Shown: positions 382 through 27,190, counted from the first letter of the stretch. The stretch: 64,000 nt of DNA from IMGVR_UViG_3300026097_000876:62001-126000; one strand, 5' to 3'. Notes: a model not told the origin generated them from the letters alone. Made by a program: numbers and translations.

Positions 382-410
382 TTGACAGCAGCATGCTTTT
401 GTAGTATGCT
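382..410 (+). promoter_or_regulatory. Early sigma70-type promoter
   Basis: TTGACA(382-387)-17 bp-TATGCT(405-410); GAGGGC RBS at 438. Confidence 0.8.
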
Positions 411-448
411 GCTGCATATACACTAAAAAATTGCAAAGAGGGCAAACT

Positions 449-901
449 ATGCAATACAACAAGATTTTTACAAACTGCGCTGTAGTAAGCGACGAGAATT
501 TTGACTTGCTTACAGCAGAACAGCTAGAAGCATTTACACAAGCGGAACGTGCTTTTGTGCTTGTGTTTTTAGCAGACACACTTGCAAACTTGACACAGGT
601 TAACGCAGACTGTGCAGTAGAAAACGACAACTACTTTGTGCGACTAGCGGATGCGCAGGAGGTTATGCAAAATTTGCAAATGCTGTACGACACACTAGAC
701 GACAGCGACGACTGTACAAATATACAGTTTACGCTAGCGGATGCGGGTGCTGCGCTGTGTAGTTACGACACAGAATACAGGGAATGCATAGCGGAGCAAT
801 TTGAAGACGCATGCGACAACGCTGCTAAACTTGCAAAGCAAACTGGCAACACAAACGCAGACTACAGCACACTTGCTGTGCGTGTGCTGTGTAGTTATTA
901 A
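449..901 (+). CDS. Early hypothetical protein, acidic, 150 aa
   Basis: ATG 449 after GAGGGC RBS (ORF track starts at TTG 431). Confidence 0.8.
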   Translation: MQYNKIFTNCAVVSDENFDLLTAEQLEAFTQAERAFVLVFLADTLANLTQVNADCAVENDNYFVRLADAQEVMQNLQMLYDTLDDSDDCTNIQFTLADAGAALCSYDTEYRECIAEQFEDACDNAAKLAKQTGNTNADYSTLAVRVLCSY

Positions 902-937: not shown

Positions 938-973
938 GTACACATAAACAATTAATTGCAAAGAGGGCACGCT

Positions 974-1177
974 ATGCAAAAACTAAACGAAAAAGCACTA
1001 CAGCAGTGGAACGCAACACGGCGTTTTATGCGTACACTAGACGAAGCGCAGCTGCATTTATTAATAGCGGCGCTAGACGGCGACAACAAGTTGCAAGTTA
1101 CGCAAACGCTAGTAGACAGCGCATATGACGCAATAGACGACAACATGCGCAAACAATATGCACAACACTTAAAATAG
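974..1177 (+). CDS. Early hypothetical protein, 67 aa
   Basis: ATG 974 after GAGGGC RBS. Confidence 0.8.
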   Translation: MQKLNEKALQQWNATRRFMRTLDEAQLHLLIAALDGDNKLQVTQTLVDSAYDAIDDNMRKQYAQHLK

Positions 1178-1180
1178 GGG

Positions 1181-1208
1181 TTGACAACTGTGCATATTGT
1201 GTTATACT
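1181..1208 (+). promoter_or_regulatory. Early promoter, -10 enclosed in an 11-bp inverted repeat
   Basis: TTGACA-16-TATACT with TGn extension; AACTGTGCATA(1186-1196)/TATGCACAGTT(1210-1220). Confidence 0.8.
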
Positions 1209-1241
1209 GTATGCACAGTTAAACAATATAGAGGGCACTAT

Positions 1242-1502
1242 ATGCAAAACACTACATACTATCCTGCCGCAGTCGCAAACGTTATAACACATTACGCACA
1301 AGCAATTGCACGTGCTAGTTATGACAGCGTAGTGGAAGCAGGCGACTACAGCATAACAGACAACTGTGCAAAAATACAGTACCTGTTGTCTGCTAGTGCG
1401 CAACACACCTCAGTTAAAAGTCTAGCAGTTGCCGCACTAAACAGCGCAGAGGATACAGTGCTGCGCGAATGCATGTACACACAATTAATGCAACACGCAT
1501 AA
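1242..1502 (+). CDS. Early hypothetical protein, 86 aa
   Basis: ATG 1242 after GAGGGC at 1231. Confidence 0.8.
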   Translation: MQNTTYYPAAVANVITHYAQAIARASYDSVVEAGDYSITDNCAKIQYLLSASAQHTSVKSLAVAALNSAEDTVLRECMYTQLMQHA

Positions 1503-8848: not shown

Positions 8849-8864
8849 GTGTGTTAACTAAACA

Positions 8865-9474: not shown

Positions 9475-9555
9475 AACGAACGTGTATGTACACAGTACAT
9501 TTATATGTGTCTAAACAAGAACCTCTTAGCTGTGTGCTAGGATAGCAAGTGTGGA

Positions 9556-9684: not shown

Positions 9685-9715
9685 CTTTTGATAGAACTCT
9701 TGTTTGTCTTTTGGT

Positions 9716-9985
9716 TTATCCGTCATGTTGCTCTAGCTTAGGACTGTTACTAAAGAACTTTCTACTGTCAAGCGGATCACAGCCAGCTGCTTGTAGAGTG
9801 CGTGTGCCTTTTACTGTAAGCCATATCTCACCTGAGCGATTGGTTTCTAGATATCCCAGTGTAAAGTAAGGCTGAAGAGCTCGCATAGCATCTTTGTCTT
9901 TCTTGTCCCAGTGCCCGCTCTTGGCCTTGACAATCTTATCGTAGTCTTCTAGTGTTAGTTGAGGATTGTAATACTTTTCGTACAT
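9716..9985 (-). CDS. Hypothetical protein, 89 aa, possible winged helix
   Basis: AAGGAG RBS; GYLETNRSGEIWLTVKG resembles a wHTH wing. Confidence 0.7.
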   Translation of the reverse strand: MYEKYYNPQLTLEDYDKIVKAKSGHWDKKDKDAMRALQPYFTLGYLETNRSGEIWLTVKGTRTLQAAGCDPLDSRKFFSNSPKLEQHDG

Positions 9986-10219
9986 GCTGTCTCCTTTTGA
10001 ATATTTAGCGTTTGGTGCTGCGTTAGCTTGTAAAATTCTGCGCTAACGCTTCGCGCTTTTTAGCGTAAACCGCTCTGCGGCTGCGGGCCATAAATGGCTC
10101 TTAATTGCATGGGTTTTCGGTTTTGCTACCCAATATACCATTTAGTGGTTAAACGGCAATTTAAGGCTCATTTATGCTGGTAAAACCTTTATTTACGGTG
10201 TCTGTCGCACGGGTGATTT

Positions 10220-11023: not shown

Positions 11024-11799
11024 AGATCAATCTCCACCGTGACACTGTGCATGCCCTGGGTGTTGCACTTGGCTATCCACTCACCGTCAGGCCCTATTAT
11101 GCCCGAGGGTGCTTGCATAAAGTTTACGGTGCCTCCCAGCATGTCTGTGCTGGCGCTGGCCACTACTACGTGCATGCCACACAGCTTGGCCTGTAGCTGT
11201 AGATGATTTTCGTGCCATGTGTATACGTGTGGGTCGTAGGCTTCAGCGTTACAATTGGCGCTCACAAACACACAGCATGCACCCTGGTCTTTGATAGTGT
11301 TCCATAGGTAAGGGTCACCCTTGGGTGCCGCTGAGGGGAATGCCCAGGCGTCATTGCAAATAAGGCTGCCCAACCTAGGGCCAGTGTTGCTGAGTTCAAC
11401 TATGCTGCTTTCTAGGCCTGGTAGGTAAAAATAGTATTCACCCAGGCCATTGTGTGTGCGGGTCAATAGTTGTTTGTTGTATGCTGATATGAGCTGCCCT
11501 TCACGATAGTAGCGTATCTGATTGTAGGGGAAGCCATCCTGTTCGTAGTGGCCTGTGCCCAGTGCTATGCTGCGTTTGTTTTTGATCAGATAAGTTTCCA
11601 GGGTGTCCAAGGCTTTGAAGTATTCGTTCTTTTGCTCTTGGGTACCCTCATGACACACGTTGGCACAATAGCCGCTGAGGCTACCCTCGGGGGTAAGGAT
11701 CCAATCTGAATCAGGGTGGGTTTCTAGTACGTCTAACAAACACTCAAGATTTTCTTGAACGCTGTCAAACACAGGCTGTTGACTAGCGGTGATCTTCAT
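11020..11799 (-). CDS. Carbon-nitrogen hydrolase (nitrilase superfamily), copy A
   Basis: E-K-C triad: LTPEGSLSGY, YNKQ, LICNDAW. Confidence 0.8.
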   Translation of the reverse strand: MKITASQQPVFDSVQENLECLLDVLETHPDSDWILTPEGSLSGYCANVCHEGTQEQKNEYFKALDTLETYLIKNKRSIALGTGHYEQDGFPYNQIRYYREGQLISAYNKQLLTRTHNGLGEYYFYLPGLESSIVELSNTGPRLGSLICNDAWAFPSAAPKGDPYLWNTIKDQGACCVFVSANCNAEAYDPHVYTWHENHLQLQAKLCGMHVVVASASTDMLGGTVNFMQAPSGIIGPDGEWIAKCNTQGMHSVTVEIDL

Positions 11800-12643
11800 C
11801 TGGGTCCTTCCTTACAAAAATATGGCTGCTGGCTTTTTCTACAGCCAGTCTTGGTTTGATGTCTAGCTCTACTGTGACACTGTCCATGCCTAGGTCTTTG
11901 CACTTGGCTATCCACTCACCGTCTGGTCCGATCACTCCTGAAGAGCACTGTAGGAAATCTGTTTCTTTGTGATTAATACTAGTAGCACTTCCAGCATGCA
12001 CTACATACATACCAAACTCTCTAGCAAATATCTGTAGATGTGATTCGTTCCATACTTTTGCTAGGTGGTCTGGTTCTTCGCCGTTACAGTTGCTGCTTAC
12101 AAACAAAATGTCTACACCGTTCTTTGCTAGCTCTACTTGGTAGTAGGGATTACCGGCAGGTGCTACTCTTGGCATACACCAAAAGTCATTGCATATCATA
12201 GATGATGCTAGAACAGTTTGTTCTTGATCTAAATAAAAATAGTTAGGCACATGTCCTGCAAGATAGTGATGATGTTCCCCACCGCCTTCCCAGCCACGGG
12301 TAATAATACGTTTCTTGTACATGCTGACTAGGTTGCCCTGATCGTATATCAACATGCTGTTGTAGGGATAACCATCGTTGTCTTTTATGCCCGAGCCTAG
12401 TGCTAGGTTTATGCTTAGTTCCTTTGCACGATCCTTGATTTTTTGTATAATCTTCTCTACTTGTGTTGTTCTTACATCGAACACATTATTCAGCGTAGGC
12501 GGCATACAGTATCCGCTTACAGCACACTCTGGAGTTAACAGCCAATCGGTATCTGCATTTGCTTCCAGCACATCTAGTGTGCATTCGTAGTTCATTAGTA
12601 GGTCTCTAAAAATAGGCTGTTGGCTTACAGTAACTTTGATCAT
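11783..12643 (-). CDS. Carbon-nitrogen hydrolase (nitrilase superfamily), copy B
   Basis: E-K-C triad: LTPECAVSGY, YKKR, MICNDFW. Confidence 0.8.
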   Translation of the reverse strand: MIKVTVSQQPIFRDLLMNYECTLDVLEANADTDWLLTPECAVSGYCMPPTLNNVFDVRTTQVEKIIQKIKDRAKELSINLALGSGIKDNDGYPYNSMLIYDQGNLVSMYKKRIITRGWEGGGEHHHYLAGHVPNYFYLDQEQTVLASSMICNDFWCMPRVAPAGNPYYQVELAKNGVDILFVSSNCNGEEPDHLAKVWNESHLQIFAREFGMYVVHAGSATSINHKETDFLQCSSGVIGPDGEWIAKCKDLGMDSVTVELDIKPRLAVEKASSHIFVRKDPDEDHR

Positions 12644-14060: not shown

Positions 14061-15500
14061 TTATTCCTCGTTGTCAAGATTTGCTAAAAATGATCTAAGT
14101 TTAGTAGACTCTGCTTCTACTTTGATTTTTCCTACTGACGAGCCTTGTGATGGATCGTCATTTGTTTCCGTATTATCTACGGCAGAATTGCGTTTGAGAT
14201 TACCTACAATGTTATTCACTGTTTTGTTAGTACCAAACGAATTAGTATTTTCATCTTCGTCTTCGTCCAAGTTTCGAATACGTAATGTGTCTACATCAAA
14301 CTCTAGATCAATTTTTTGTCCCACACCACTCGACGAACGTGTCTTCATTAACTGGATCTGATAGCGTCCTCGCTCACGCATTGCTCTACTAGTAAAGATA
14401 CCAATCAAGTTATCTGCTGTGTTGATCTTAGATATACCGCCCGAGATGTGCGAGTGATCAAATTCAATTTCTTCTACTGAACTTCTGTTCAACTGAGATG
14501 CTGTAACAAAGATAGTGTTCAACTCCATAGCCAAGTTACGTAACTCTTCCGATACATACTTGTCTTTCACAAACAAGTTCTCTGCGCTAATCTTTGCGGC
14601 AATAGGATGCATCAAATCCAAGTAGTCAACTAATAGTACATCTACCTTACGTCCTGTTTTAATTTCGTATTCTTTCAAATAGCTTCTGATATCGTTTGCG
14701 TTTTTGCCTGTGGGCATATACTTGACCTGGAATGCACCCGACTTCTTGCCAATCATCTTGACTTTCATTTCTACATCGTCAATACTTTTAAACACATCGC
14801 GACTAGGAATATCTGTAGTCATCGAATCAAGACGCATACTTACTAAGTTTTCTGAAAGCTCAAATGTCAAGTACACCACGTTCAATCCTTGTAGTGCCCA
14901 GTTCACTCCCATGTTTGCTAAGAATAAACTCTTACCAGATCCTGAACCACCTGCAAAGATATTCAGTTCGCCTCTGTTAAATCCGCCAAATAATTTTTTA
15001 TCTAAACTTGGCCAGCCTGTAGATATCTGTCCGTTCTTGTCTTTAATTGCTTCAAGACGAGACTTAGGATCAGCAAAGTAATCAGTACCTAGATCTTTCT
15101 GTAGACCAATTTGCACAGCTTTCTTAACCAAGTCTTCAACAGGCCCGTACTCGCCCTTTTCTAATAAGTCAGCACTATCAAGGATTGCTTTCTCTAATGC
15201 TTTGTGTCTACTAAATGTTTCAAATTCTTTGAGCAACCAGTCATAGTGATTTTCTGCTAAGTCGCCCGGGTGTTTTAAATCTACCTGAGTTGCTGCATTT
15301 ATCATTTCAAAAGTAGGTAATGCATTGTGTTCGACAACATAATCATTTAAAAACTTTGCAGGGTCTTGTAAGCGTCTATCAAAAGATAACGGATCAAACA
15401 CAGCTTGACATCGCACAAAACTCTCGGCGTCAGTCAGCATCATTTCTAGATAGATTTTTTGTATATCGTAACCGTAGTCTGTATTTTGTCTTGTGCTCAT
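14061..15500 (-). CDS. gp41: Replicative DnaB-like helicase (T4 gp41-like)
   Basis: Walker A GGSGSGKS; LLVDYLDLM; TASQLNR; QLMKTR. Confidence 0.9.
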   Translation of the reverse strand: MSTRQNTDYGYDIQKIYLEMMLTDAESFVRCQAVFDPLSFDRRLQDPAKFLNDYVVEHNALPTFEMINAATQVDLKHPGDLAENHYDWLLKEFETFSRHKALEKAILDSADLLEKGEYGPVEDLVKKAVQIGLQKDLGTDYFADPKSRLEAIKDKNGQISTGWPSLDKKLFGGFNRGELNIFAGGSGSGKSLFLANMGVNWALQGLNVVYLTFELSENLVSMRLDSMTTDIPSRDVFKSIDDVEMKVKMIGKKSGAFQVKYMPTGKNANDIRSYLKEYEIKTGRKVDVLLVDYLDLMHPIAAKISAENLFVKDKYVSEELRNLAMELNTIFVTASQLNRSSVEEIEFDHSHISGGISKINTADNLIGIFTSRAMRERGRYQIQLMKTRSSSGVGQKIDLEFDVDTLRIRNLDEDEDENTNSFGTNKTVNNIVGNLKRNSAVDNTETNDDPSQGSSVGKIKVEAESTKLRSFLANLDNEE

Positions 15501-15506
15501 ATTAGT

Positions 15507-15536
15507 ATTATAAAGCCTTATGCCATTTGTTGTCAA
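15507..15536 (-). promoter_or_regulatory. sigma70-type promoter for the helicase (leaderless)
   Basis: TTGACA-18-TATAAT, 6 nt from ATG. Confidence 0.7.
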
Positions 15537-16476
15537 TTGATATATGCTGTTTTGAATGTGCTAGAAACGTACCGATACAACTTCCAGGATCGCCTGGGTT
15601 CTTAGGCACATGCACATTTTGCCATTGATCTCTAATTTTATCAATAGCTTGTTTGTTTAGTGCGCCTCCGCCTGCTAGTGCTAAGTTAGAACTCTTAGTT
15701 TTATTTTTTGCCCAACAGCTTAGACCAAACACAGCATCTTCAAATATTTCTTGAGTAGTTGCTGCTAACATTCCTAAAGCTCTTTCAGTGCTTATTTCTG
15801 GACGGAACCATCGACAGCCTCTATGTAAATTTTCTTTAAATCTCCACCTAGGGTCTCGAAAGCTAGGTAAACGGTCTACTATCTCAGTCATTACAGCGTT
15901 GCGAAAATGTTCCGGGTCGTGACCTTCCCCCATGCTTGCTACCATGTACTCGTCACGTTGTGGTACTAATCCTAAACGTTGAGTCATTGCCGAATAAAAT
16001 AAGCCAGGACTGTGTGGATAACCTTGACTGTAAATCTTTCTAAGTTTATTGTTCTTTCCGTGCCATATAGTTAAAGTTTCAAACTCACCTATACTATCTA
16101 AACAGATTACAGCACAATCATCATGAGGTTGTGTGTAATAAGCATAGGCAGCATGACTTAGATGATGCTGAGTATATTTAATTTTACAATTGATATCCCA
16201 TTGCTTTAAATATTTTTTTATGTTATTTTCTTTGTATAACCAACCCTGTCCTGCTTTGAACTGACGCAGTGTTTTTAGTACAGGTTTTTCATACCAATAA
16301 ATCTTAGATGGCGTTCCAAATTTTTGTTTGGCTACTTCTAGCTGTGTCCAATTAAAGTCTGGGTCATTAGGAATTTTGGAGAAGTCCTTTGCAAGACTTG
16401 CCCATAGTAACTTATTGTCATCAAATACAGCTAGGCTAGCATCGTGACTATTGCCAACCATTCCCCAATTAATCAT
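15508..16476 (-). CDS. Carbamoyltransferase (NodU/CmcH/TobZ family), N-terminal Kae1-like domain only
   Basis: SHDASLA, HHLSHAA, DSIGE, GGGALN, PGDPG motifs; 322 aa. Confidence 0.8.
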   Translation of the reverse strand: MINWGMVGNSHDASLAVFDDNKLLWASLAKDFSKIPNDPDFNWTQLEVAKQKFGTPSKIYWYEKPVLKTLRQFKAGQGWLYKENNIKKYLKQWDINCKIKYTQHHLSHAAYAYYTQPHDDCAVICLDSIGEFETLTIWHGKNNKLRKIYSQGYPHSPGLFYSAMTQRLGLVPQRDEYMVASMGEGHDPEHFRNAVMTEIVDRLPSFRDPRWRFKENLHRGCRWFRPEISTERALGMLAATTQEIFEDAVFGLSCWAKNKTKSSNLALAGGGALNKQAIDKIRDQWQNVHVPKNPGDPGSCIGTFLAHSKQHISIDNKWHKAL

Positions 16477-16595
16477 TTGTAAATAAAAGGATCCCGTTTT
16501 TTAAGTTCTTCAATCTTCTTTTTTAGATCTTGTTTCTTCTTCCATTTAGTATAGGGAATTATTAACCAATTCCAGAATTTTTTTAAGTGAACCAT
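16473..16595 (-). CDS. Small basic protein, 40 aa (...KKRDPFIYK)
   Basis: Read by hand; overlaps the primase stop and the next start. Confidence 0.6.
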   Translation of the reverse strand: MVHLKKFWNWLIIPYTKWKKKQDLKKKIEELKKRDPFIYK

Positions 16596-17566
16596 TTTTT
16601 TGCTCTCAGTCTAATTTTAAGTGGCGATTCTTCTGCAGCATTTGCAATGCTATGTAACGTATACAGTCTTCCGTATTTACTTACAGCATCTCCGATGTCG
16701 CCTATCTCTGGCATCCAATCAGGTAAACTAACACTCCAACCTAGTTCAATAGCACGTTCTACTAGTTTGCTACCAGCCTTGTCTCTGTCAGGTACTACAA
16801 TGATCTGTTTCTGTAGCCTGTTGAGTAGCATTGCTTGTTGATCGCTAATCTCTGAACCGCCTAGGGCACAGCCTTCTACATGGATAGCATCGATCTGTCC
16901 TTCGCATACAATAGCAAACACTTTAGTATGACGCTGTTCATCTAGCCCATACACGAACCCGGGCTGTATCTCACTCAAGTACTTGGGCTTCTTGTCTGCT
17001 AGTATTGAACGTCCTGTCCACCCTACGATGCGTCCTTCGTAGTAGAAGGGTATGATCAATCTATCACGATAGCCTAGGCTTGGGCTCCAGTAGTAGTCAG
17101 TGTCATCTACATTCAAGTGACGTGCTGCCATGTACTCTAGTATAGCCATGCTAAACTTGTTGAAGTCTGTGATGTCTGTGATCTTAATCGCATCGTCTGG
17201 CAACGGGACAGTATTGAAGGTAGGCAGTTCCGCTATACGGTTCTTGACCTCAACGCCTTCGTTCTCTCTCATAACCTCAAGTGCCACCTTGTTGATTATA
17301 TCGTCAGGTGCTCCCATCCACTGGAGAAGTTTACGCAGCTTGTGGCTAAAGTTCCTGCCCGGTTGCCAGGATGCTTTGAAGCCGCAGTTAAAACAGTGAT
17401 AACTTACGCCACCATCCGGATTGGCAATTAAGCCGCCACGTTGTCTTGTGTCCGCAGTTGTACCATTATGATTACAACACGGAGCATTAAACGAAACCCA
17501 ACCACTAGGAGTTGTCTTACGCTTTGGTGGCAAATATGTTAGAACTGTATCAGATACTATACTCAT
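16583..17566 (-). CDS. gp61: DNA primase (T4 gp61/DnaG-like)
   Basis: Zn-binding CC.H...HCFNCG; TOPRIM CEGQIDA and PDRD. Confidence 0.9.
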   Translation of the reverse strand: MSIVSDTVLTYLPPKRKTTPSGWVSFNAPCCNHNGTTADTRQRGGLIANPDGGVSYHCFNCGFKASWQPGRNFSHKLRKLLQWMGAPDDIINKVALEVMRENEGVEVKNRIAELPTFNTVPLPDDAIKITDITDFNKFSMAILEYMAARHLNVDDTDYYWSPSLGYRDRLIIPFYYEGRIVGWTGRSILADKKPKYLSEIQPGFVYGLDEQRHTKVFAIVCEGQIDAIHVEGCALGGSEISDQQAMLLNRLQKQIIVVPDRDKAGSKLVERAIELGWSVSLPDWMPEIGDIGDAVSKYGRLYTLHSIANAAEESPLKIRLRAKKWFT

Positions 17567-17601: not shown

Positions 17602-18366
17602 CTAATTTCTTAAAAGAATTTTATCAATAGTTCCAGTGTTACCAGAATTATTACTATACTTAAATCTCAAATGGCTAAAAACACCATTGAAATTTTCGTA
17701 TACTGGAGTTGAAGGAGTTGACATATTAATAGTACTAATGTCAAACCAAGACTGAGTTGTATTATCATCCAACGTACCCTGTATAGTTACAGTGCCGTCG
17801 AATCCTGTTGAATAAATTGCAGCTGTGTGTAAGCCTTCATTGCTATTGATCTGTGGTTCTGCATCTATAGCTGAACTAGTATTTTCTACAAATGTTGAAA
17901 TTGTTTTTGAAACAATAGGTCCTGGGAACGCAGAAGTTATTAGTTCGATTGTGCCGCTGGTTCCAAATTGATCGTCTGCATATGTAATATTGTTTGTGCT
18001 ATCAGCAATTTTATTTAGATACACAGTATACATCATATATTGTCCGTCAATATTTAATATGTCGCCATCTGCAATATTAATTGTAAACTGACCTTTATAT
18101 AATGAACTAGTTTCTTTAACAGTGCCCTGATACTTTTTTAATAATACCTTGTCTTCTGTAAAAACTTCTACATAAGGAATATATGTGTTTAAAATTGAAA
18201 CTGGTTTGTGATCACTATTTTTAACTTCAAACGTTATCACGTTATCAATTCCTTTTATTACTTTTATATTTCTTTGATACAATTTTCTATACTCCACGTT
18301 GCCTGCAAAGTCATCTGCGATAACTACGGTTCTGTTTGAAACTAAATACCTTGTCACTAGCTGCAT
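17602..18366 (-). CDS. Hypothetical protein, beta-rich, probably late or virion
   Basis: ORF track; TATAAATA late promoter upstream. Confidence 0.75.
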   Translation of the reverse strand: MQLVTRYLVSNRTVVIADDFAGNVEYRKLYQRNIKVIKGIDNVITFEVKNSDHKPVSILNTYIPYVEVFTEDKVLLKKYQGTVKETSSLYKGQFTINIADGDILNIDGQYMMYTVYLNKIADSTNNITYADDQFGTSGTIELITSAFPGPIVSKTISTFVENTSSAIDAEPQINSNEGLHTAAIYSTGFDGTVTIQGTLDDNTTQSWFDISTINMSTPSTPVYENFNGVFSHLRFKYSNNSGNTGTIDKILLRN

Positions 18367-18401: not shown

Positions 18402-18773
18402 ATGTTAAGAAAAGATATAGAAGAAAAATTTCCGTTTTTGAGTGTTGTCACGTATGGTGGTTCCGAGTACATCGGTATCATTAATAATCAGGACAACTAT
18501 ATTACTAGTATGTATGTGTATACTGAATTACGCACCCAAGAAGATAAACAAAGGTTTATCGAACTTGGCGAAGTATGGTGGTGGGAATCAAATAGAATGA
18601 TCCCTATTAATATATTTTTAAATTCTGATATGCAACAATTTAGATATGCACAAATAACTATGAATTCTAAAGATGTTAAAATAACACTAGGGCCAACTGT
18701 AAATCTTAACAGACTACATGTTAAGAGAGTAAAACGTAAAAGTGTACAGTTAGTTAAAAAGCCTAAGAACTAA
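18402..18773 (+). CDS. Hypothetical protein, 123 aa
   Basis: ORF track. Confidence 0.75.
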   Translation: MLRKDIEEKFPFLSVVTYGGSEYIGIINNQDNYITSMYVYTELRTQEDKQRFIELGEVWWWESNRMIPINIFLNSDMQQFRYAQITMNSKDVKITLGPTVNLNRLHVKRVKRKSVQLVKKPKN

Positions 18774-19323
18774 TTTGTTCGCAAAGTAAATTCATATGTA
18801 CTACAACAGCTACAGCATACGAGAAGGCATGGCTTTTCTTAAAGTAGTACCCGCCGTCAGTCGGCTTCGTCCACACTTCCTTCATTATCGTTTCCCAACC
18901 CTTGTCCGCTAGATGTCTCTTCGCTGGACGTATTATCGCTAGTGTCGCTGCCAATTGTTCTACCGATTGCGGCTTCAATTGTTTCAGCAGTGCTCCGTGC
19001 CCGTTTAGATGAAAGACGCTTTCGCTGAAGTCTTCGTGTTCCAGAAGTTGCCATAAAGGAGTCCTTTCCATTAATTCTTGAAGATGTCGACTGTCCTTAA
19101 CGTCTTTGTAAATGTTGACGTTAAGGAAGTCTAGTTTAAAGTAGCCGCGTTCTTCTGCGGTCTTATGATCAATTGTAGATAGATTATCTACAGGATTGTG
19201 TGGAATTTCAGTAGCATAAATTCCAGTATTGTGTTTTTTCCCAGTGTCTAATTTTGCTACTCGATGTTGTAGCTTAGACAATATAATATCTCTGTTAGGA
19301 AAATCAATATCAATATCAGGCAT
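18763..19323 (-). CDS. Miniature DNA polymerase III alpha (DnaE)-like protein
   Basis: MPDIDIDF, GYFKLDFLNV, AIIRP, FKKSHAFSYA; only 186 aa. Confidence 0.8.
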   Translation of the reverse strand: MPDIDIDFPNRDIILSKLQHRVAKLDTGKKHNTGIYATEIPHNPVDNLSTIDHKTAEERGYFKLDFLNVNIYKDVKDSRHLQELMERTPLWQLLEHEDFSESVFHLNGHGALLKQLKPQSVEQLAATLAIIRPAKRHLADKGWETIMKEVWTKPTDGGYYFKKSHAFSYAVAVVVHMNLLCEQISS

Positions 19324-19804
19324 TTGCTAGTGCTTCTTTCCATTTTGAAGGAGTTACGTGTTCTTGCATAGTAACACCGTTAAGCAAATCTATCAAGCGC
19401 AAGAATGTTCTAGCTGAATAACCACTTAACCATTCCTCTCTAGTTTTTCCTAATTCGTTAGTCCAGCGAGCAAGTACTTTGCATGGCCTTGAAATTTGTA
19501 AAGTAACACCTGGAAAACTTAAACAAGATTCCCACATATCAACTTCTTGTTCGTCTACTTCAATAATTTCAGGATTAATAGCAAGCATTTTTCGCTCATT
19601 AATGTTGTTTGTTGACGAATTCATCATAGCAAAAGCCCTAAAAGTTTCTCCTATTTGATTTGCTGATACTCCAGTTCCGTTATTTTTAATTATAACATCA
19701 AACATTTCTTCTTTAAGTTCAGTAAAATTAACTGGTGCATTGTCAATATCAATCTGGTCGCACACAGTTTCTAAAAGTTTATTTGGGTGTGTAATTACTT
19801 CCAT
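19316..19804 (-). CDS. def: Peptide deformylase-like protein with a degenerate active site
   Basis: GTGVSANQIG, INPEI and ESCLSFPG present; HExxH replaced by RLIDL. Confidence 0.8.
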   Translation of the reverse strand: MEVITHPNKLLETVCDQIDIDNAPVNFTELKEEMFDVIIKNNGTGVSANQIGETFRAFAMMNSSTNNINERKMLAINPEIIEVDEQEVDMWESCLSFPGVTLQISRPCKVLARWTNELGKTREEWLSGYSARTFLRLIDLLNGVTMQEHVTPSKWKEALANA

Positions 19805-19805
19805 C

Positions 19806-20366
19806 TTATTTCTCCTCATAAAAATAGTCTACTACAAACACTCTTTTGTCTTGCCTAGTCGGATATGATCCATATAGGACTGTGCTTTTAAAAATTAACA
19901 CATCGCCTCTATTAGGTTTATAACAGAGGTCGTGTGTATTTCCTAACCCGTCATAAAGAAACGCAAAAGTTCCTCCATGCCATGTCGATTCATCGCTGTC
20001 TGGTTCTGTTAAGTAACAAATTGCACTAATTTTCTTTACAGTTTGATCACTGTGTCTGTGCGCCTTTTGCCACCCTCCTTTCTTGTAATCAACAATCCAT
20101 AGTGCGCATAAATCTGTTAGTTGTATATTTAACCCAACTTCGTCAATTTTATCCTGTAAAAAAGGTTTATACTTCCATTCGTTGAGATATGCACGTTCGT
20201 GTACATTAAATTGCTGTCCTCGATATGTAGTGGTTTGATCGCTTACATCGGTTCGAGTATCTTTAGGGAATACTTTTTTATCCCAATGAAAATCAAACTC
20301 TTCGCAATCAGGATAGTGTGATTCTATGATCCATTGGTGTTCGTTTCCTAATAAACATGTTTTCAT
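19806..20366 (-). CDS. 2OG-Fe(II) oxygenase-like protein
   Basis: HRH, SAICYL, GGTF, PNRGDVLIF, KRVFVVD; distal His appears replaced by Tyr. Confidence 0.7.
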   Translation of the reverse strand: MKTCLLGNEHQWIIESHYPDCEEFDFHWDKKVFPKDTRTDVSDQTTTYRGQQFNVHERAYLNEWKYKPFLQDKIDEVGLNIQLTDLCALWIVDYKKGGWQKAHRHSDQTVKKISAICYLTEPDSDESTWHGGTFAFLYDGLGNTHDLCYKPNRGDVLIFKSTVLYGSYPTRQDKRVFVVDYFYEEK

Positions 20367-21049
20367 AGTTTTGATTCCTTGGCTACTTCTTTTACTATTT
20401 CAACATCAGCAACTTTCTTTTTAAATTTGAGTGCCCAGTGTTGAGGATTTAATACAACATATACAAAGCCTAATTGCTCGTCATTAAACTTGTTTAGCAT
20501 TTCTTTTCCGCTTGAACAATTCAACACTAACCAAGGACTTATCTTTCCGTCCTTAATATCTCGTACAATTCGATTTAAACTTGCGTAACGAAAATAATCA
20601 TTCCACGGAGTATCTTTTTCTTCGCCCCAATCCATCATTGTTTCGATAGAACGTTTAACTGCTGTATCCATATTTTCTTTCAGGATCAAATCAATGACAT
20701 ACTTTTCGTATAGTTCATCTTTACACCAGTGATCTAATTTAATACCACTAGTTACTACATGGTCGATATAACGTTCAGGATATAATGGACGTACATTGCT
20801 AACAAATGATCCAAATTTTACAAATGCATTGTAGTACTGAGAATTGCAAAATTCTTTATATGTTTTATCCTGTTTAGCACCTGCACTTAGTTTGTAAAAT
20901 CTTTGAAATGCGTATAATCCTAGTTGTACTCGCTTTTCATTTTTCTGTAAAGCTCTGCGTTTTTTTTCGCACATATGCACAGCAAGAGTTTTTTCTCTTA
21001 CATACGCTGTGTTGCAATATTCACACACATAAGGCTTTTCTACAGACAT
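20363..21049 (-). CDS. Conserved hypothetical protein with an N-terminal C2H-type Zn finger
   Basis: YVCEYC...LAVHMC. Confidence 0.7.
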   Translation of the reverse strand: MSVEKPYVCEYCNTAYVREKTLAVHMCEKKRRALQKNEKRVQLGLYAFQRFYKLSAGAKQDKTYKEFCNSQYYNAFVKFGSFVSNVRPLYPERYIDHVVTSGIKLDHWCKDELYEKYVIDLILKENMDTAVKRSIETMMDWGEEKDTPWNDYFRYASLNRIVRDIKDGKISPWLVLNCSSGKEMLNKFNDEQLGFVYVVLNPQHWALKFKKKVADVEIVKEVAKESKL

Positions 21050-21053
21050 TTGT

Positions 21054-21782
21054 TTAAATGACCCATTCGATTGTTTTTGACGATTCAAAAATTCTATCAT
21101 ACTCTTTTGATTCCATGGTGTGTAATTTTATTTGCCAGTCATTAATAAACTCTTTTGTACTGTCAGTTATCTTATAGTGTAACACGTTTTCTACAAAATT
21201 ACAATGTTCTAATGGCAGAGGATGATCTTCAATATACCATTCATTATCTCGTAAATATTGCGGTCTTGTTTTATCCTTTTCAATATTAGGATACCAGGAT
21301 AATTCAGTAAGTGTTTTAGTTTTAGGTTCAACCCATTGTTTATACATGTCTAATATTTTAGATATTGTTTCATGTTCTAATAGTATATCGTCAGTATAAG
21401 GATTGTTGATACTAGTACTGATTACATTAGCACCAGTTGTTTTTAATGCCAATAGTGTACTTGCAATTAAATTACAATCTCGATAAACATAATATTCTAA
21501 ATCATCATGTTCGATATTCTGATTAAAGATATTTCCTCTAGTTACCCATTCGCCATTATATCTATCTTCTCTAAAAAAGTTACTCCACATAATTATAATT
21601 GTATCGTCTTTGTTAAACTTTTTTATAGCATTTGTTTCCCAGATTCTATTAGCAATTAATTGGTTACCGCTGCCTAACTTTCCACAGTTGTAACCTTCCT
21701 GAGATTCTCTAATTATAATATCTGCCCATGTAGGATAATAGTATTTTGTAAAGCTGCATCCATAAGCAAACACTCGACTCAA
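21054..21782 (-). CDS. SGNH-like hydrolase
   Basis: FAYGCSFT, GSGN, DHP motifs. Confidence 0.6.
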   Translation of the reverse strand: MSRVFAYGCSFTKYYYPTWADIIIRESQEGYNCGKLGSGNQLIANRIWETNAIKKFNKDDTIIIMWSNFFREDRYNGEWVTRGNIFNQNIEHDDLEYYVYRDCNLIASTLLALKTTGANVISTSINNPYTDDILLEHETISKILDMYKQWVEPKTKTLTELSWYPNIEKDKTRPQYLRDNEWYIEDHPLPLEHCNFVENVLHYKITDSTKEFINDWQIKLHTMESKEYDRIFESSKTIEWVI

Positions 21783-23623: not shown

Positions 23624-25087
23624 TTAATTCCAATCCACCTTTTCTATAGTAAATGGGTATTGCGCCTCTTTGTAAAACTTTTTACGTTGTGTGAGATGCC
23701 GCTTCGCATACTTGCATGTTGATGTCAAGTCCCATATTTGTACGAAGTCTTTGTCCTTTGCCTTTCTTACGCCTCTACCAATTGATTGAATAACTCTAAC
23801 AAAACTTTTGCCAGGCTCAAGAAGAACAAGATTAAAGATACGTGGAATGTTAAGTCCAACAGCCGCTACACCATATGTTGCAATAATAACTTCGTTAGTG
23901 CCTTCCTTGATTGTATCGTATGTTTCTTTTCTATCTTTATTCTTAACAGCGCCACTTACAAATGTGCTGCCTGGTATAAGTTCTGCTAGTGCTTCTCCTG
24001 CACTAATTCTATCTACTAGTATAAGTGTGTTGCCTGATTCTTTTACTGTGCTTAATAATTTGCCTATGTATTCTAATCGTTTTGTATTTGTTGTTAGATA
24101 TTTTAATTCTTCTTGATAGCCTGCATGTGCTACTGTATCAATTAACTGTACTACGTTAACGTGACACTCAGATAATACACCTTTATCCTGTAGTTCTTTT
24201 GCACTGATCTGTCCAATTACTGGACCTAGGCTAGCATGAATACTTTCAAACTCAAACTTCTCTTTGGGTACTGTACCAGTTAGTCCCCAACGGATCGGTG
24301 CATTGCGTAAGTTACGAGTCAGTAAGTTTTTAAGAACTTCTGCCTTTGCCTGGTGTACTTCGTCGACAATAATAGTGCTCACATCTTCTAAGAACTCTGC
24401 AAGGCTTAGTACAGCCGTGCCGTCTTTATGCTTCTTGTCTAGAATATTCAAACTCTGCCAAGTGCAAATAGTGTGAGTCTTACCTAACATCTTTCTGTCG
24501 CCAAAGTATACACCTACATCTAGTCCACAGTTGATGTAGTCTTCTTCTGTTTGTTCTACCAACGACTTGTTAGGTACAATAACTAAACTACGTCCATACT
24601 TCTCGCTCATATGCGACAGTGTAGCTGTTGTAATTGTTTTTCCTGCGCCTGTTGCAATCTGCTGTAGACTCTGCGGGTTCTTTGCAAAGTTGTTAATTGC
24701 TTCTACTTGATAGTCACGAAGAATAATATCTTCGCCTTCTGCTGGATGACCTTTGGGCCATACAACACCTTGCTCTTTCCAGTAGTTCTCTGTTACTTCC
24801 GGAAAGTTTAAATCGATAGGATGACGTCTATCTTCAATATCAACTATTTGAACGTTGTTTTTTGCAAGTACATCACTAACAACATCGAGATGATTAACAT
24901 AGCCGGTTCCGCCAATACCAAAGAACGCAACTTTGCCGTCCCAGCGTCCTAGCTTATATTGCGGCATATATTTTGCATACGGCACTTCAAATTTTAGTGC
25001 ATTAGCGAGTTTTCGTCGTACATCTACATCTAGTCCTTCTAGCTTGATGTTTACTTCATCTTCGATTATTAGTTTACACGCTGACAT
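23624..25087 (-). CDS. uvsW: SF2 DNA helicase (UvsW-like)
   Basis: LRDYQ, ATGAGKT, IIVDEVH, GLTGT, QSIGRGVR. Confidence 0.9.
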   Translation of the reverse strand: MSACKLIIEDEVNIKLEGLDVDVRRKLANALKFEVPYAKYMPQYKLGRWDGKVAFFGIGGTGYVNHLDVVSDVLAKNNVQIVDIEDRRHPIDLNFPEVTENYWKEQGVVWPKGHPAEGEDIILRDYQVEAINNFAKNPQSLQQIATGAGKTITTATLSHMSEKYGRSLVIVPNKSLVEQTEEDYINCGLDVGVYFGDRKMLGKTHTICTWQSLNILDKKHKDGTAVLSLAEFLEDVSTIIVDEVHQAKAEVLKNLLTRNLRNAPIRWGLTGTVPKEKFEFESIHASLGPVIGQISAKELQDKGVLSECHVNVVQLIDTVAHAGYQEELKYLTTNTKRLEYIGKLLSTVKESGNTLILVDRISAGEALAELIPGSTFVSGAVKNKDRKETYDTIKEGTNEVIIATYGVAAVGLNIPRIFNLVLLEPGKSFVRVIQSIGRGVRKAKDKDFVQIWDLTSTCKYAKRHLTQRKKFYKEAQYPFTIEKVDWN

Positions 25088-26327
25088 GTATAAATTTCCT
25101 CTGACTCCTACTCCAGTATCCTTCAGATACCTTGTCGTTGCATATAATTTGTAAATCGCATTGTTGCGAAAATGCTGTTACATGATTAAAACGTAAACTC
25201 CTAGAATCGTAATTAACTACACAATTAGGAACCCATCCTGATTTAATTAAAGGTTTAGGAAGTTTACTACTATTAATATACACTATTTTTGTATTTTCTG
25301 CAACTGGATTATTAAGTTTCTTTTGTTTTACATATTCGTTAAATGGATCAGAACCGTCTAGTCTAAACAATACAGATACGTCTTCAGAGTTTATAGAATA
25401 TTTTAAAGAATTATACGTTTCTACTAATTTATCAAATGCGTTATTTTCATCAAGTACAATTAGTATTGGAAATCTTTTTAATTCGGTTACACTAGATATA
25501 ATTTGATCAAAATTAAATTCATTATTGATTACTATTTCAGGATTATCTCTATTAATTATGATCTGAGACAAAGTTGAGTACTCTCTAATATATTGATTAA
25601 TATTATCAAATGAATGTAAACCATATAAGTACCTTCTTTCGTAATATAATACTATGTTATCTTTAGGATCGCCTATTGTTTTTAACAAATAGTTTACAGC
25701 ATTATCAGGTAAGTTTTTAATTTTATAATCATAAACTCCTGGAATGTACTCTTCTTTATTTTCATAATAACCTAAAAGAACATTGTATGCATCTAATATT
25801 TCTTGCTGTATTTCAAATTTGTGTTCGAATCGTTTAGCAATTTGCATTAGCTTAAACAAGTTTTCTGCATTTACTGGGAAGTGATGCGTGTGCTTATCAT
25901 ATTGTGTATTACGTAACGGATTTAAGTTTTTAATCTCTTGTACACGTTTAATAATTTTATTAGAAAAAGGAAATCTAATTGCTAAAAATTCTTCGTTATT
26001 TCGAGACACTATTCTAAGCCAGTGAGAGCGATCTATTTCTCTAAGGCCGTATTTTTTAATTTTAGAAATTGCTAAAACATCAATGTTTTTTTCGTTAAAC
26101 TGATCTGCATAATCATTAGTTAACTTTTCTTTAACTAGTGCATATTGTCTATCAGTCATCGCAACACCTTTAGACAATTGCCTAGCAATGCTAATTAAAA
26201 TAGTTGCATCGTTTTGTTTTAGATGAAATCCAAAATCTTCATAAGAAGTTTTTCCTTGTTTAGGAATTCTAACACCAGTTAGTAATGTTAGACAGTCCTC
26301 GCAAGTCGTAGGTTCTAGTACATTCAT
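25074..26327 (-). CDS. Hypothetical protein, 417 aa
   Basis: ORF track; own promoter. Confidence 0.75.
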   Translation of the reverse strand: MNVLEPTTCEDCLTLLTGVRIPKQGKTSYEDFGFHLKQNDATILISIARQLSKGVAMTDRQYALVKEKLTNDYADQFNEKNIDVLAISKIKKYGLREIDRSHWLRIVSRNNEEFLAIRFPFSNKIIKRVQEIKNLNPLRNTQYDKHTHHFPVNAENLFKLMQIAKRFEHKFEIQQEILDAYNVLLGYYENKEEYIPGVYDYKIKNLPDNAVNYLLKTIGDPKDNIVLYYERRYLYGLHSFDNINQYIREYSTLSQIIINRDNPEIVINNEFNFDQIISSVTELKRFPILIVLDENNAFDKLVETYNSLKYSINSEDVSVLFRLDGSDPFNEYVKQKKLNNPVAENTKIVYINSSKLPKPLIKSGWVPNCVVNYDSRSLRFNHVTAFSQQCDLQIICNDKVSEGYWSRSQRKFIHVSV

Positions 26328-26333
26328 AATAGT

Positions 26334-26362
26334 ATTATACGATACTATAGTTTAGAAGTCAA
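26334..26362 (-). promoter_or_regulatory. sigma70-type promoter (leaderless)
   Basis: TTGACT-17-TATAAT, 6 nt from ATG. Confidence 0.75.
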
Positions 26363-27190
26363 GCGTTTAAGTGGTAAACCTGATGCAATTTCTTCTACAG
26401 TCCATTCAGTATGAGCGTAGTCGTTTAGCCATTGTTGCCTGTCAGGTTGGGGAGGATTGTTTATGTTGGTAAGACTCTTAATACTTACGTCCCATGCTAG
26501 GCTTGATTGTGATGTATATGCCGGTACACCTTCTAAGACGCTGTGTATGCCTGGGTTAGACGTCCAACTAACAGTACAGTATATGTCGTTGAAATTCATA
26601 TCGAAGTCGTCGTATGTGTCTTTTAATTGTATAGGTTCTTGCCTGTACACGTTCCTATATTGTCTTTCGATTGCTTCTAGTCTACATCTTGGATGTGCTC
26701 GAAATATAATAGGACGATCTGTGTGTGCTTGTACGTTTTCGATAGTGTCCATTACCCATCGACTCATACGTGGTTGATTGCGCCACTGTTCGCTCTTTTC
26801 GTGTTGTCCTGCTATTAGAACATAATCGCCGTCGGATCTCCAAGGCTTACAAACCAGTCCCAAGCTATCAGCCCTAGTCCTATCATTGTTTTGCTCACCA
26901 AAGTAAGCATCTCTGTTAATTCCATTTAATCCTACCTTCCATGTTGTTCCACGTTTGATACCACCTACTTCTAAGACAACCACCGGTTTGGATCTGGCTC
27001 TAGCGGCTTCCCAAATAGCTTTGTTTCCAGACATACGACCATTCCAAAGAACGCTCCAAATAACATCAACGTCGGCACTAGGATCATTGTCAACACAATC
27101 ATAGCCAAGAGACTCAGCACCGCTAACAAAAGCGTCAAACACAGGTCGGCTGTTGAGTGCTCCATATTGTCTCCAAAGGCTAAACTTCAT
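26345..27190 (-). CDS. GT-B-like / capsule-biosynthesis-like protein, paralog 1
   Basis: FRAHP, TSNPGIHSVLEGVP, RQQWL..YAHTEWT.EEI..G. Confidence 0.55.
   Translation of the reverse strand: MKFSLWRQYGALNSRPVFDAFVSGAESLGYDCVDNDPSADVDVIWSVLWNGRMSGNKAIWEAARARSKPVVVLEVGGIKRGTTWKVGLNGINRDAYFGEQNNDRTRADSLGLVCKPWRSDGDYVLIAGQHEKSEQWRNQPRMSRWVMDTIENVQAHTDRPIIFRAHPRCRLEAIERQYRNVYRQEPIQLKDTYDDFDMNFNDIYCTVSWTSNPGIHSVLEGVPAYTSQSSLAWDVSIKSLTNINNPPQPDRQQWLNDYAHTEWTVEEIASGLPLKRLTSKL

What the first reader, a model, noticed from the sequence alone, without database searches (positions are those of the whole stretch)
18763..19323. 186-aa mini-DnaE that keeps all three catalytic aspartates
Bacterial DnaE exceeds 1000 aa. 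This ORF starts at PDIDIDF (the two palm Asp, E. coli D401/D403), keeps KLDFL (D555), and carries the finger motifs AIIRP and FKKSHAFSY. It lacks PHP, thumb, clamp-binding and OB domains. It has clean start and stop codons overlapping its neighbours, so it does not look like debris. It may be a minimal C-family nucleotidyltransferase, one piece of a split polymerase, or a primer or protein nucleotidylating enzyme.
Basis: partly seen in the sequence, partly recalled or inferred. Interest (0 to 1): 0.7.

Follow-up and report, generated by a model that had tools for sequence, protein, structure and literature searches.

The report
Half of a split mini-DnaE polymerase
This 186-residue jumbo-phage protein is the metal-binding and finger half of a two-piece, stripped-down relative of the bacterial replicative DNA polymerase; the family was noted by comparative genomics in 2021, and I found no bench test of it.

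Summary
It is not debris. It matches phrog_11778 end to end (E 2e-59). It has 408 relatives at the 50%-identity cluster level, and the catalytic residues are invariant. dN/dS is about 0.14. Its AlphaFold model (pLDDT 97) matches only C-family polymerases (Z up to 10, E. coli alpha 400-781).

It is not a self-sufficient enzyme, because it lacks the NTP-binding (GRGS) half of the palm. In relatives that half is a separate ~170-185-aa protein, the N-unit, encoded 40 to over 120 kb away. The N-unit ends exactly where this ORF begins. The two halves co-occur across jumbo-phage genera, are fused in three rare 375-aa proteins, and are predicted to bind (score 0.92, best control 0.02).

The window's 262-kb record lacks the N-unit and PolB because both lie in a ~70-kb segment missing between the contig's ends.

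Iyer et al. 2021 already described this "minimal split DNA Pol III alpha" in group 2.2 jumbo phages. This is therefore a new member of a known, biochemically untested kind.

The parts
18763..19323 (-). C-unit of the split minimal Pol III alpha (186 aa plus TAG stop). It corresponds to E. coli DnaE 399-781 with the thumb and most finger inserts deleted.
19300..19317 (-). Codons for D3-I-D5-I-D7-F8, the DxD metal-binding strand (E. coli D401/D403). D3 and D5 are 98% conserved across the family. In the complex model this strand pairs with partner strand 148-152.
19129..19137 (-). Codons for K63-L-D65 (Taq K616/D618, equivalent to E. coli K553/D555), carrying the third catalytic Asp. K63 and D65 are invariant.
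18925..18930 (-). Codons for R132-P133 (E. coli R639-P640), a finger motif that is invariant in the family.
18829..18840 (-). Codons for K162-K163-S164-H165 (E. coli N757-K758-S759-H760). H165 aligns with the steric-gate His and is 96% conserved.
18402..18773 (+). Context: a convergent 123-aa gene (phrog_11637, unknown function) whose end overlaps the C-unit's 3' end by 11 nt. It holds the same position in Ettore, Turkey3 and G002.
20363..21100 (-). Context: a 245-aa gene (phrog_11058) with one C2H2-type zinc finger at residues 19-44. It lies directly upstream of the C-unit in Ettore and G002, and one small gene away in Turkey3. Here it is separated from the C-unit by two inserted genes.
19316..20366 (-). 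Context: peptide deformylase (19316-19819) and a 2OG-Fe(II) oxygenase (19806-20366), inserted upstream of the C-unit relative to Ettore and Turkey3.
14061..17566 (-). Context, downstream replication genes: DnaG-type primase (16583-17566), a carbamoyltransferase N-domain gene (15508-16476) and DnaB/gp41-like helicase (14061-15536).
23624..25087 (-). Context: UvsW-type helicase, the upstream border of the conserved replication module.

Best explanation
The ORF encodes the C-terminal subunit (C-unit) of a two-piece, minimal C-family (Pol III alpha / DnaE-like) nucleotidyltransferase typical of T4-related 'group 2.2' jumbo phages.

What the C-unit carries:
- the metal-binding strands of the Pol-beta-like palm (D3, D5, D65, plus K63);
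- a pared-down finger module (R132-P133, K163, and H165, which aligns with the steric-gate His).

What it lacks: the PHP domain, the thumb, most finger inserts, and all clamp-, tau- and OB-parts.

The other half of the palm is a separate ~170-185-aa protein (N-unit) encoded far away in the genome. It carries the invariant GxGRGSSxAS triphosphate-binding loop and ends exactly where DnaE continues with MPDxDxDF.

The two proteins are predicted to assemble non-covalently. No intein is present. The N-unit strand just before the GS loop pairs with the C-unit's DxD strand, and the N-unit's last helix packs on the C-unit's KKSH helix, rebuilding one active site.

Shown here (computationally): homology, fold, conservation, purifying selection, co-occurrence, natural fusions and a predicted interface.

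Inferred: two-metal catalysis on a primed template; preference for dNTPs from the conserved His; low processivity and no proofreading, because there is no thumb, clamp site or exonuclease. The role is also inferred: a second, short-patch polymerase beside the phage PolB, for example primer extension or gap filling. This rests on its fixed place between UvsW and the primase/DnaB genes.

In this 262-kb record the N-unit and PolB are not present, because they fall in the unsequenced ~70 kb between the contig's ends.
For: Family and homology:
- phrog_11778 E 2e-59 over the full length; phrog_405 E 3e-9.
- Co-linear motif matches to E. coli and Taq alpha.

Fold:
- AF2 model with pLDDT 96.9 and pTM 0.88.
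- The Foldseek top 14 are all Pol III alpha.
- The VIA-align top 15 are all DnaE/PolC, Z 6.4-10.0, with 179-186 of 186 residues aligned to E. coli 400-781; the next unrelated hit has Z 3.4.

Selection:
- K63, D65, R132 and P133 are invariant. D3, D5, D7 and H165 are >=96% conserved in 82-83 representatives at 28-53% identity.
- dN/dS median 0.14 over 692 pairs, with all key residues kept in 75 of 75 sequences.

Partner:
- The Ettore N-unit matches E. coli DnaE 322-392 at E 2e-5 and ends at ...EFLK.
- N-units pass PF07733 (36-43 bits against a 23.9 cut-off, profile positions ~19-94). In the 375-aa fusion P0084 the match runs through the junction (positions 12-121).
- Fusions P0084, P0272 and P0273.
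- G001 and G002, whose C-units are 72-74% identical to ours, carry the N-unit and PolB on the same contig.
- Genus counts of N- and C-units in complete phages match: 34/34, 11/11, 10/11, 8/8, 8/8, 4/4, 4/4.

Binding: the complex model scored 0.92 with best control 0.02. The mark was reached by 58 of 80 solved complexes and 2 of 110 mismatched pairs. Runs agree in >=97% of contacts and the partner's pLDDT is >=92. N-unit residues 148-152 touch C-unit residues 6-8. The N-unit alone folds poorly (pLDDT 65) but reaches 86-89 in the complex.

Missing segment: the own start maps to G001 139.7-146.9 kb and the own end to G001 219.7-220.8 kb. The N-unit (183 kb) and PolB (211 kb) lie between them.

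Synteny.

Literature: Iyer et al. 2021, PMC7824862; H760 steric gate, PMC8485763.
Against: - No enzyme activity or physical interaction has been measured for any member that I could find.
- The partner is not in the window's own record. Pairing for this very genome therefore rests on relatives.
- The complex score may partly reflect the model's memory of single-chain DnaE structures, and my own alignments were used, so the calibration counts hold only roughly.
- Lack of a thumb and of any clamp-binding part makes efficient templated synthesis uncertain.
- The proposed role (primer extension or gap filling) rests only on gene neighbourhood and analogy.
- Foldseek TM-scores are moderate (0.38-0.45), because about half of the DnaE region is deleted.
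Confidence: 0.8

Rival explanations
1. The two-piece enzyme is catalytically active but is not a templated DNA polymerase. It could be a template-independent or specialised nucleotidyltransferase, for example for tailing, primer synthesis, nucleotide-signal synthesis or DNA modification, built on the C-family palm.
For: Pol-beta-fold palms serve many chemistries (established knowledge). The thumb, the clamp-binding parts and about 200 residues of the DnaE region are absent. No exonuclease partner is present in this record. PolB already provides a replicase in relatives.
Against: The retained finger motifs are those that contact the template and dNTP in DnaE. They include the His aligned with steric gate H760 (96% conserved) and the invariant RP. 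The gene sits in a conserved primase/helicase/UvsW module. All structural neighbours are replicative C-family polymerases.
Confidence: 0.12
2. The 186-aa protein works alone, or as a homo-oligomer, as a self-sufficient minimal nucleotidyltransferase.
For: It carries all three catalytic Asp and folds confidently on its own (pLDDT 96.9). No partner gene exists in the 262-kb record.
Against: It lacks the GS-loop half of the palm that binds the triphosphate in DnaE. N- and C-units co-occur across genera and are fused in three proteins. The predicted interface completes the sheet at the DxD strand. The partner's absence from the record is explained by the contig break.
Confidence: 0.04
3. It is a catalytically dead remnant of a DnaE, kept for a structural or regulatory role such as a decoy for host replisome parts, or it is decaying debris.
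For: The size reduction is drastic, there is no Pfam hit above threshold, and NCBIfam scores are far below cut-off.
Against: dN/dS is about 0.14. Catalytic and dNTP-contact residues are the most conserved positions across 408 clusters. ORF boundaries are identical on 75 contigs. Gene order is conserved from Pseudomonas to Escherichia phages.
Confidence: 0.03
4. The short ORF is an assembly or frameshift artefact that truncates a full-length dnaE.
For: None, beyond the unusual size.
Against: The flanking DNA encodes unrelated genes in all frames. The full-length DnaE profile finds only this ORF in the genome. The same ~186-aa ORF recurs on 75-80 independent environmental contigs and in 96 deposited phage genomes.
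Confidence: 0.01

Closest known systems
Minimal split DNA polymerase III alpha of group 2.2 jumbo phages (Iyer, Anantharaman, Krishnan, Burroughs, Aravind 2021, Viruses 13:63, PMC7824862); C-unit = phrog_11778
   Same: This is that family. It is a ~190-aa C-terminal 'Mg2+- and template-binding' unit, with a separate N-terminal 'NTP-binding' unit encoded at a distance, in T4-like jumbo phages that also have PolB, UvsW, DnaB and a DnaG-type primase.
   Different: The window's phage is an uncultivated relative whose best deposited match (PA5oct group) is 52% identical. Its record lacks the N-unit and PolB because of a contig break. The passages of the paper that I read do not mention the exact split point, natural fusions, selection figures or an interface prediction.
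Bacterial Pol III alpha / DnaE (E. coli 2HNH, Taq 2HPI/3E0D, M. tuberculosis 5LEW)
   Same: Same fold and the same catalytic and finger residues: D401/D403/D555, K553, R639-P640, K758, H760. Structural Z is 9-10 over all 186 residues.
   Different: DnaE is one chain of about 1160 aa with PHP, a full palm, thumb, large fingers, a clamp-binding motif, OB and tau-binding parts. Here only the equivalent of 399-781 is present, with about 200 of those residues deleted, and the 271-398 part of the palm is on another protein.
PolC of Gram-positive bacteria (3F2B)
   Same: C-family palm and fingers; Z 9.6, aligned to PolC 971-1296.
   Different: PolC has an inserted exonuclease and a different domain order, and it is a single large chain.
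Full-length DnaE-type polymerases of phages (phrog_405; group 3.2 jumbo phages, Gordonia, Bacillus and Streptomyces phages)
   Same: Homologous catalytic core. The N-unit and C-unit each hit these by sequence.
   Different: Those are host-like, single-chain enzymes of about 1100-1200 aa with PHP that serve as the phage's main replicase. The mini version accompanies a PolB.
Naturally split DnaE of cyanobacteria joined by a split intein (own knowledge, not tested here)
   Same: A C-family polymerase encoded as two separate genes.
   Different: There the halves carry intein pieces and are ligated by protein trans-splicing, and the split is at another site. Here the N-unit ends at ...EFL(R/K) and the C-unit starts M-P-D-x-D. 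There is no room for an intein and no intein/Hint hit in Pfam. Assembly must therefore be non-covalent.
Two-polymerase replisomes (B. subtilis DnaE extending primers for PolC; eukaryotic Pol alpha) as functional analogy only (own knowledge)
   Same: A second, less processive polymerase beside the main replicase, encoded close to the primase and helicase genes.
   Different: There is no evidence yet that the phage enzyme extends primers. This is the proposed role, not a finding.

Membership tests
C-family DNA polymerase catalytic core (Pol III alpha / DnaE / PolC) | Three catalytic Asp of the Pol-beta-like palm (E. coli D401, D403, D555) | tested here: met
   D3, D5 and D65 align to them by sequence and structure and are 98-100% conserved.
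C-family DNA polymerase catalytic core (Pol III alpha / DnaE / PolC) | GS-motif (triphosphate-binding) half of the palm in the same polypeptide | tested here: not met
   The ORF starts at the DxD strand. The GRGS loop is on a separate protein in relatives.
C-family DNA polymerase catalytic core (Pol III alpha / DnaE / PolC) | Finger motifs that contact the dNTP and template (RP; K-S-H with the steric-gate His) | tested here: met
   R132-P133 = R639-P640; K163-S164-H165 = K758-S759-H760.
C-family DNA polymerase catalytic core (Pol III alpha / DnaE / PolC) | PHP domain, thumb, and clamp-binding/OB/tau C-terminal parts | tested here: not met
   No PHP hit in the protein or the genome. There are 55 residues between the DxD motif and K63, against 147 in E. 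coli. The protein ends at the equivalent of E. coli 781.
C-family DNA polymerase catalytic core (Pol III alpha / DnaE / PolC) | Curated whole-protein thresholds (Pfam PF07733/PF17657; NCBIfam TIGR00594) | tested here: not met
   PF17657 scores 16.2 bits against a cut-off of 22. TIGR00594 scores 14.9 bits against 434. PF07733 finds nothing in the own genome.
C-family DNA polymerase catalytic core (Pol III alpha / DnaE / PolC) | Template-directed DNA synthesis | not testable with these tools
   Needs biochemistry.
Split minimal Pol III alpha of group 2.2 jumbo phages (C-unit, phrog_11778) | A protein of about 185-215 aa that begins at the DxD motif and matches the family profile end to end | tested here: met
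   phrog_11778 E 2e-59, residues 3-184 on profile positions 8-195 of 197. Family members are 185-215 aa.
Split minimal Pol III alpha of group 2.2 jumbo phages (C-unit, phrog_11778) | A separate N-unit gene elsewhere in the same genome | tested here: inconclusive
   Absent from the 262-kb record. Present on the same contig in the two closest long relatives, inside the segment that the own record lacks. N-unit-like contigs exist in the probable source run but cannot be linked to this genome.
Split minimal Pol III alpha of group 2.2 jumbo phages (C-unit, phrog_11778) | Host genome is a T4-related jumbo phage with UvsW, DnaB, DnaG-type primase and RecA/UvsY | tested here: met
Split minimal Pol III alpha of group 2.2 jumbo phages (C-unit, phrog_11778) | Accompanying family B polymerase | tested here: inconclusive
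   None in the record. Present in Ettore, Turkey3, G001 and G002. It would lie roughly 7-9 kb beyond the own record's end by synteny.
Intein-split DnaE | Intein (Hint) halves at the split ends | tested here: not met
   No Hint or intein Pfam hit. The C-unit starts M-P-D-I-D and N-units end ...EFL(R/K).

The most novel reading that the evidence does not exclude
The N-unit/C-unit heterodimer (about 370 aa in all) is a fully active, thumb-less, clamp-independent DNA polymerase, the smallest C-family polymerase known. It would act as a dedicated second polymerase in a PolB-based replisome, for example extending primase products before hand-off. That would give tailed phages a two-polymerase fork built from both the 'bacterial' and the 'archaeo-eukaryotic' polymerase lineages. 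Splitting the palm between two distant genes could then gate activity by co-expression.
Probability: 0.3. Interest if true: 0.75.

Novelty: new member of a known kind. Interest (0 to 1): 0.45.

Why it matters
C-family polymerases are the main bacterial replicases and are always large, single-chain, multi-domain enzymes. This module is about 370 residues, is divided through the middle of the catalytic sheet into two proteins, and is abundant in environmental jumbo phages: at least 543 IMG/VR loci and 408 clusters at 50% identity for the C-unit.

If active, it would define the minimal catalytic requirements of this polymerase class. It could also yield a very small polymerase scaffold. And it would bear on whether such forms are ancestral (as Iyer et al. 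propose) or reduced.

It also poses a concrete replisome question: what does a second, minimal polymerase do beside PolB? Cultured hosts exist (PA5oct on P. aeruginosa, 121Q and PBECO4 on E. coli, RaK2 on Klebsiella), so the question is directly testable.

For annotation, both halves are often labelled 'hypothetical protein', and neither reaches a curated NCBIfam cut-off.

Tried and rejected
Own-genome searches:
- Pfam searches for DNA_pol3_alpha, PHP, DNA_pol_B, DNA_pol_B_exo1 and RNase_T found nothing.
- phrog_405 found only the flagged ORF.
- A regex for the GRGS motif gave one irrelevant hit in a 693-aa ORF.
- tblastn with PolB and N-units of relatives found nothing significant, and the N-unit profile found nothing.
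- All of these absences are explained by the contig break.

Other searches:
- Megablast of the locus against phages and blastn against E. coli genomes found no match.
- Supplements of Iyer et al. are not held, so I found the N-unit independently by phmmer with E. coli DnaE 250-400.

Structure work:
- I abandoned a single-chain model of the natural fusion. MAFFT's global alignment misplaced the N-units, giving 7-13% identity where about 35% was expected.
I left out the three rows that were not from the environmental relatives or the protein searches and re-ran with the rest.
- The N-unit alone gave a low-confidence model (pLDDT 65), so its fold matches to DnaE are only weak support.
- Laying the source run's contigs on a relative's N-unit shows N-unit-like sequence in the sample but cannot tie it to this genome.

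Hypotheses rejected:
- A DnaQ-like proofreader as a universal partner: present in Turkey3's module, absent here.
- An intein-mediated split: no intein sequence.

Full report
OBSERVATION. The ORF is real. It lies at window 18763..19323 on the minus strand and encodes 186 aa from ATG to TAG. Its start overlaps the stop of an upstream peptide deformylase gene by 8 nt. Its 3' end overlaps a convergent gene by 11 nt.

Their equivalence to DnaE was tested. BLASTP against E. coli DnaE (taken from NC_000913.3) aligns residues 1-8 with 399-406 (D401/D403), 100-134 with 605-641, and 158-171 with 753-766. phmmer against PDB sequences aligns KLD with Taq K616-M617-D618. The pieces are co-linear.

HOMOLOGY AND FOLD. 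Pfam gives only a sub-threshold finger-domain hit (16.2 bits against a cut-off of 22). NCBIfam scores are far below cut-off. PHROGs gives a full-length match to a dedicated ~197-position family, phrog_11778 'DNA polymerase' (E 2e-59), and a partial match to full-length phage DnaE, phrog_405 (E 3e-9).

An AlphaFold2 model built on 82 family members is very confident (pLDDT 96.9, pTM 0.88). Foldseek against the PDB returns Pol III alpha structures as its top 14 matches. VIA-align gives Z 6.4-10.0 for 15 DnaE/PolC entries, with 179-186 of 186 residues aligned, and then drops to Z 3.4. The model's residues 1..186 map to E. coli alpha 400..781, Taq 461..838 and PolC 971..1296.

The protein is therefore the DnaE segment from the DxD strand to the steric-gate helix, with about 200 residues removed:
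- 55 residues lie between the DxD motif and K63, against 147 in E. coli. This is where the thumb is lost.
- 29 residues lie between P133 and K163, against 117 in E. coli.
- The domain limits of E. coli alpha are from Lamers et al. 2006 as I recall them.

NOT DEBRIS. An exhaustive HMMER search of 1.84 billion representatives finds 408 clusters at E<=1e-3. Full-length members are nearly all 185-215 aa and start at the DxD motif. Across 82-83 representatives only 28-53% identical to the query, K63, D65, R132 and P133 are invariant, and D3, D5, D7, H31, G34, W91 and H165 are >=96% conserved.

IMG/VR holds at least 543 confirmed loci. Among 75 close relatives, dN/dS has a median of 0.14 (IQR 0.12-0.16, 692 pairs with dS 0.05-1.5), and all key residues are kept in 75 of 75. 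The same ORF boundaries on so many independent contigs exclude misassembly.

THE MISSING HALF. The ORF lacks the part of the palm that precedes the DxD strand in DnaE. A phmmer search with E. coli DnaE 250-400 against all ORFs of two relatives found a 169-aa protein in Pseudomonas phage Ettore (58721..59227; E 2e-5) and a 172-aa one in Escherichia phage Turkey3. Both align to DnaE 322-392, including GPGRGSGAGS -> GVGRGSSVAS. Both end at ...EFLK, exactly where DnaE goes on to MPDFDVDF.

These N-units pass Pfam PF07733 (36-43 bits, cut-off 23.9) over profile positions ~19-94.

Five lines of evidence tie the halves together:
1. The junction is exact. All N-units end at EF(L/I)(R/K) and all C-units start at the DxD motif.
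2. Three rare 375-376-aa proteins (P0084, P0272, P0273) are N-unit, a 9-residue linker, then C-unit. PF07733 runs through the junction in P0084.
3. In deposited phage genomes the two genes occur in the same genera in the same numbers: Escherichia 34/34, Pseudomonas 11/11, Klebsiella 11/10, Erwinia 8/8, Salmonella 8/8, Xanthomonas 4/4, Yersinia 4/4. They lie 15 kb to over 180 kb apart.
4. The two closest long environmental contigs (C-units 72-74% identical to ours) carry the C-unit, the N-unit and PolB.
5. A complex model of the G002 N-unit with the window's protein supports binding. The score was 0.92 with best control 0.02. The mark was reached by 58 of 80 solved complexes and 2 of 110 mismatched pairs. 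The runs agree in >=97% of contacts and the partner's pLDDT is >=92.

In that model the closest contacts pair N-unit 148-152 (the strand before the GRGS loop) with C-unit 6-8 (the DxD strand). N-unit 176-185 packs on C-unit 162-175 (the KKSH helix). The N-unit folds poorly alone (pLDDT 65) but reaches 86-89 in the complex. Its confident core again matches only C-family polymerases, though weakly.

Caveat: the model may recall single-chain DnaE structures, so the pass shows likeness to the intact fold rather than measured binding. No intein sequence is present, so assembly would be non-covalent.

WHY THE WINDOW'S GENOME SHOWS NO PARTNER AND NO POLB. The window is C1:62001-126000 of a 261,806-bp linear IMG/VR record that CheckV rates at 73% complete. 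No N-unit, PolB, PHP or DnaQ-like gene is found in it.

Synteny explains this. The record's start (3.1-6.5 kb) maps collinearly to G001 139.7-146.9 kb and its end (260.3-261.3 kb) to G001 219.7-220.8 kb. No own gene maps into the ~73 kb between them, which holds G001's N-unit (183.2 kb) and PolB (210.8 kb). Comparisons with Ettore and G002 give the same picture. The probable source run also holds N-unit-like contigs, but these cannot be linked to this genome.

CONTEXT. The gene sits in a replication module whose order is conserved from Pseudomonas to Escherichia jumbo phages. The order is UvsW helicase, small genes, a zinc-finger protein (phrog_11058), the C-unit, a convergent small gene (phrog_11637), a virion-protein-like gene, DnaG-type primase, then DnaB-like helicase. 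In this phage, peptide deformylase and a 2OG-Fe(II) oxygenase are inserted just upstream. A carbamoyltransferase fragment lies between the primase and the helicase.

MECHANISM (inferred). The heterodimer would rebuild a Pol-beta-like active site:
- D3, D5 and D65 hold two metal ions.
- The N-unit's GS loop, with K63, R132 and K163, holds the triphosphate.
- H165 aligns with E. coli H760, the presumptive steric gate that excludes rNTPs and is reported as invariant in Pol III alpha (PMC8485763). This suggests dNTP use.

Without a thumb, clamp-binding site or exonuclease, the enzyme should be distributive and non-proofreading. Because relatives have a PolB replicase, the most likely role is short-patch synthesis next to the primase and helicase, either primer extension before hand-off or gap filling. 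This last step is the weakest.

WHAT IS KNOWN. Iyer et al. [quoted passage not shown] They proposed cooperation with PolB or a repair role.

A full-text search found no later paper on it. Many deposited genomes label one or both halves 'hypothetical protein'. The window's gene is thus a new, environmental member of a known but biochemically untested family.

VERDICT. Novelty: new member of a known kind. Interest is moderate (0.45), because the biology is striking and testable but has already been reported.

Noticed in passing
window 18402-18773 (+): A 123-aa gene of unknown function (phrog_11637) converges on the C-unit and overlaps its 3' end by 11 nt. It holds the same antisense position in Ettore, Turkey3 and G002, so the pairing is conserved over large distances. 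It has no Pfam or NCBIfam hit.
   Followed up: partly
window 20363-21100 (-): A 245-aa protein (phrog_11058) with a single classical C2H2-type zinc finger at residues 19-44 (E 1.6e-5 to PRDM9-type fingers among PDB sequences). It lies directly upstream of the C-unit in Ettore and G002 and one gene away in Turkey3. It could be a further replisome or polymerase accessory.
   Followed up: partly
window 19316-20366 (-): Peptide deformylase and a 2OG-Fe(II) oxygenase are inserted between the zinc-finger gene and the C-unit, relative to Ettore and Turkey3. These are auxiliary metabolic genes inside a replication module. The deformylase stop overlaps the C-unit start (ATGCCTGA).
   Followed up: partly
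window 15508-16476 (-): A 322-aa protein matches only the N-terminal domain of carbamoyltransferases (NodU/Nol-like). It is wedged between the primase and the DnaB-like helicase and overlaps both.
   Followed up: no
window 25074-39982 (-): A ~15-kb run of about 17 same-strand genes lies between UvsW and UvsY and has no counterpart there in Ettore or Turkey3. It includes GT8 and GT25 glycosyltransferases and a cytidylyltransferase-cupin (mannose-6-phosphate-isomerase-like) fusion. It looks like a glycan or sugar-nucleotide island.
   Followed up: partly
window 17602-18366 (-): A 254-aa gene with weak similarity to virion structural proteins (annotated as tail fiber in Turkey3) sits between the C-unit and the primase in all relatives examined. 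That is an odd place for a structural gene, so the annotation may be wrong.
   Followed up: no
window 4842-5093 (+): A tight cluster of three tRNA genes: Arg(TCT), Leu(TAA) and Met(CAT).
   Followed up: no
window 1-12000: G+C is 0.44-0.49 with positive GC and AT skew up to about 8 kb, against 0.32-0.40 and negative skew over most of the window. This marks a strand and compositional switch.
   Followed up: no
G000 C1:197045-212002 (+), outside the window: A single 4986-aa ORF, with homologs of similar size in Ettore (208521-220091) and Turkey3 (170860-180858).
   Followed up: no
L016 (Ettore OR805294.1 87766-93025): Ettore's PolB is in two ORFs (815 aa and 379 aa) separated by a 562-aa ORF (90200-91885), presumably a mobile insertion. 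Turkey3, G001 and G002 have a single PolB ORF of about 890-1000 aa.
   Followed up: no
L133:1066-2193: A natural single-chain form (375 aa) of the otherwise split mini-polymerase, on a 2.4-kb ENA metagenome contig. Only three such clusters were found, and their nearest C-unit relatives (51-59% identity) are split.
   Followed up: partly
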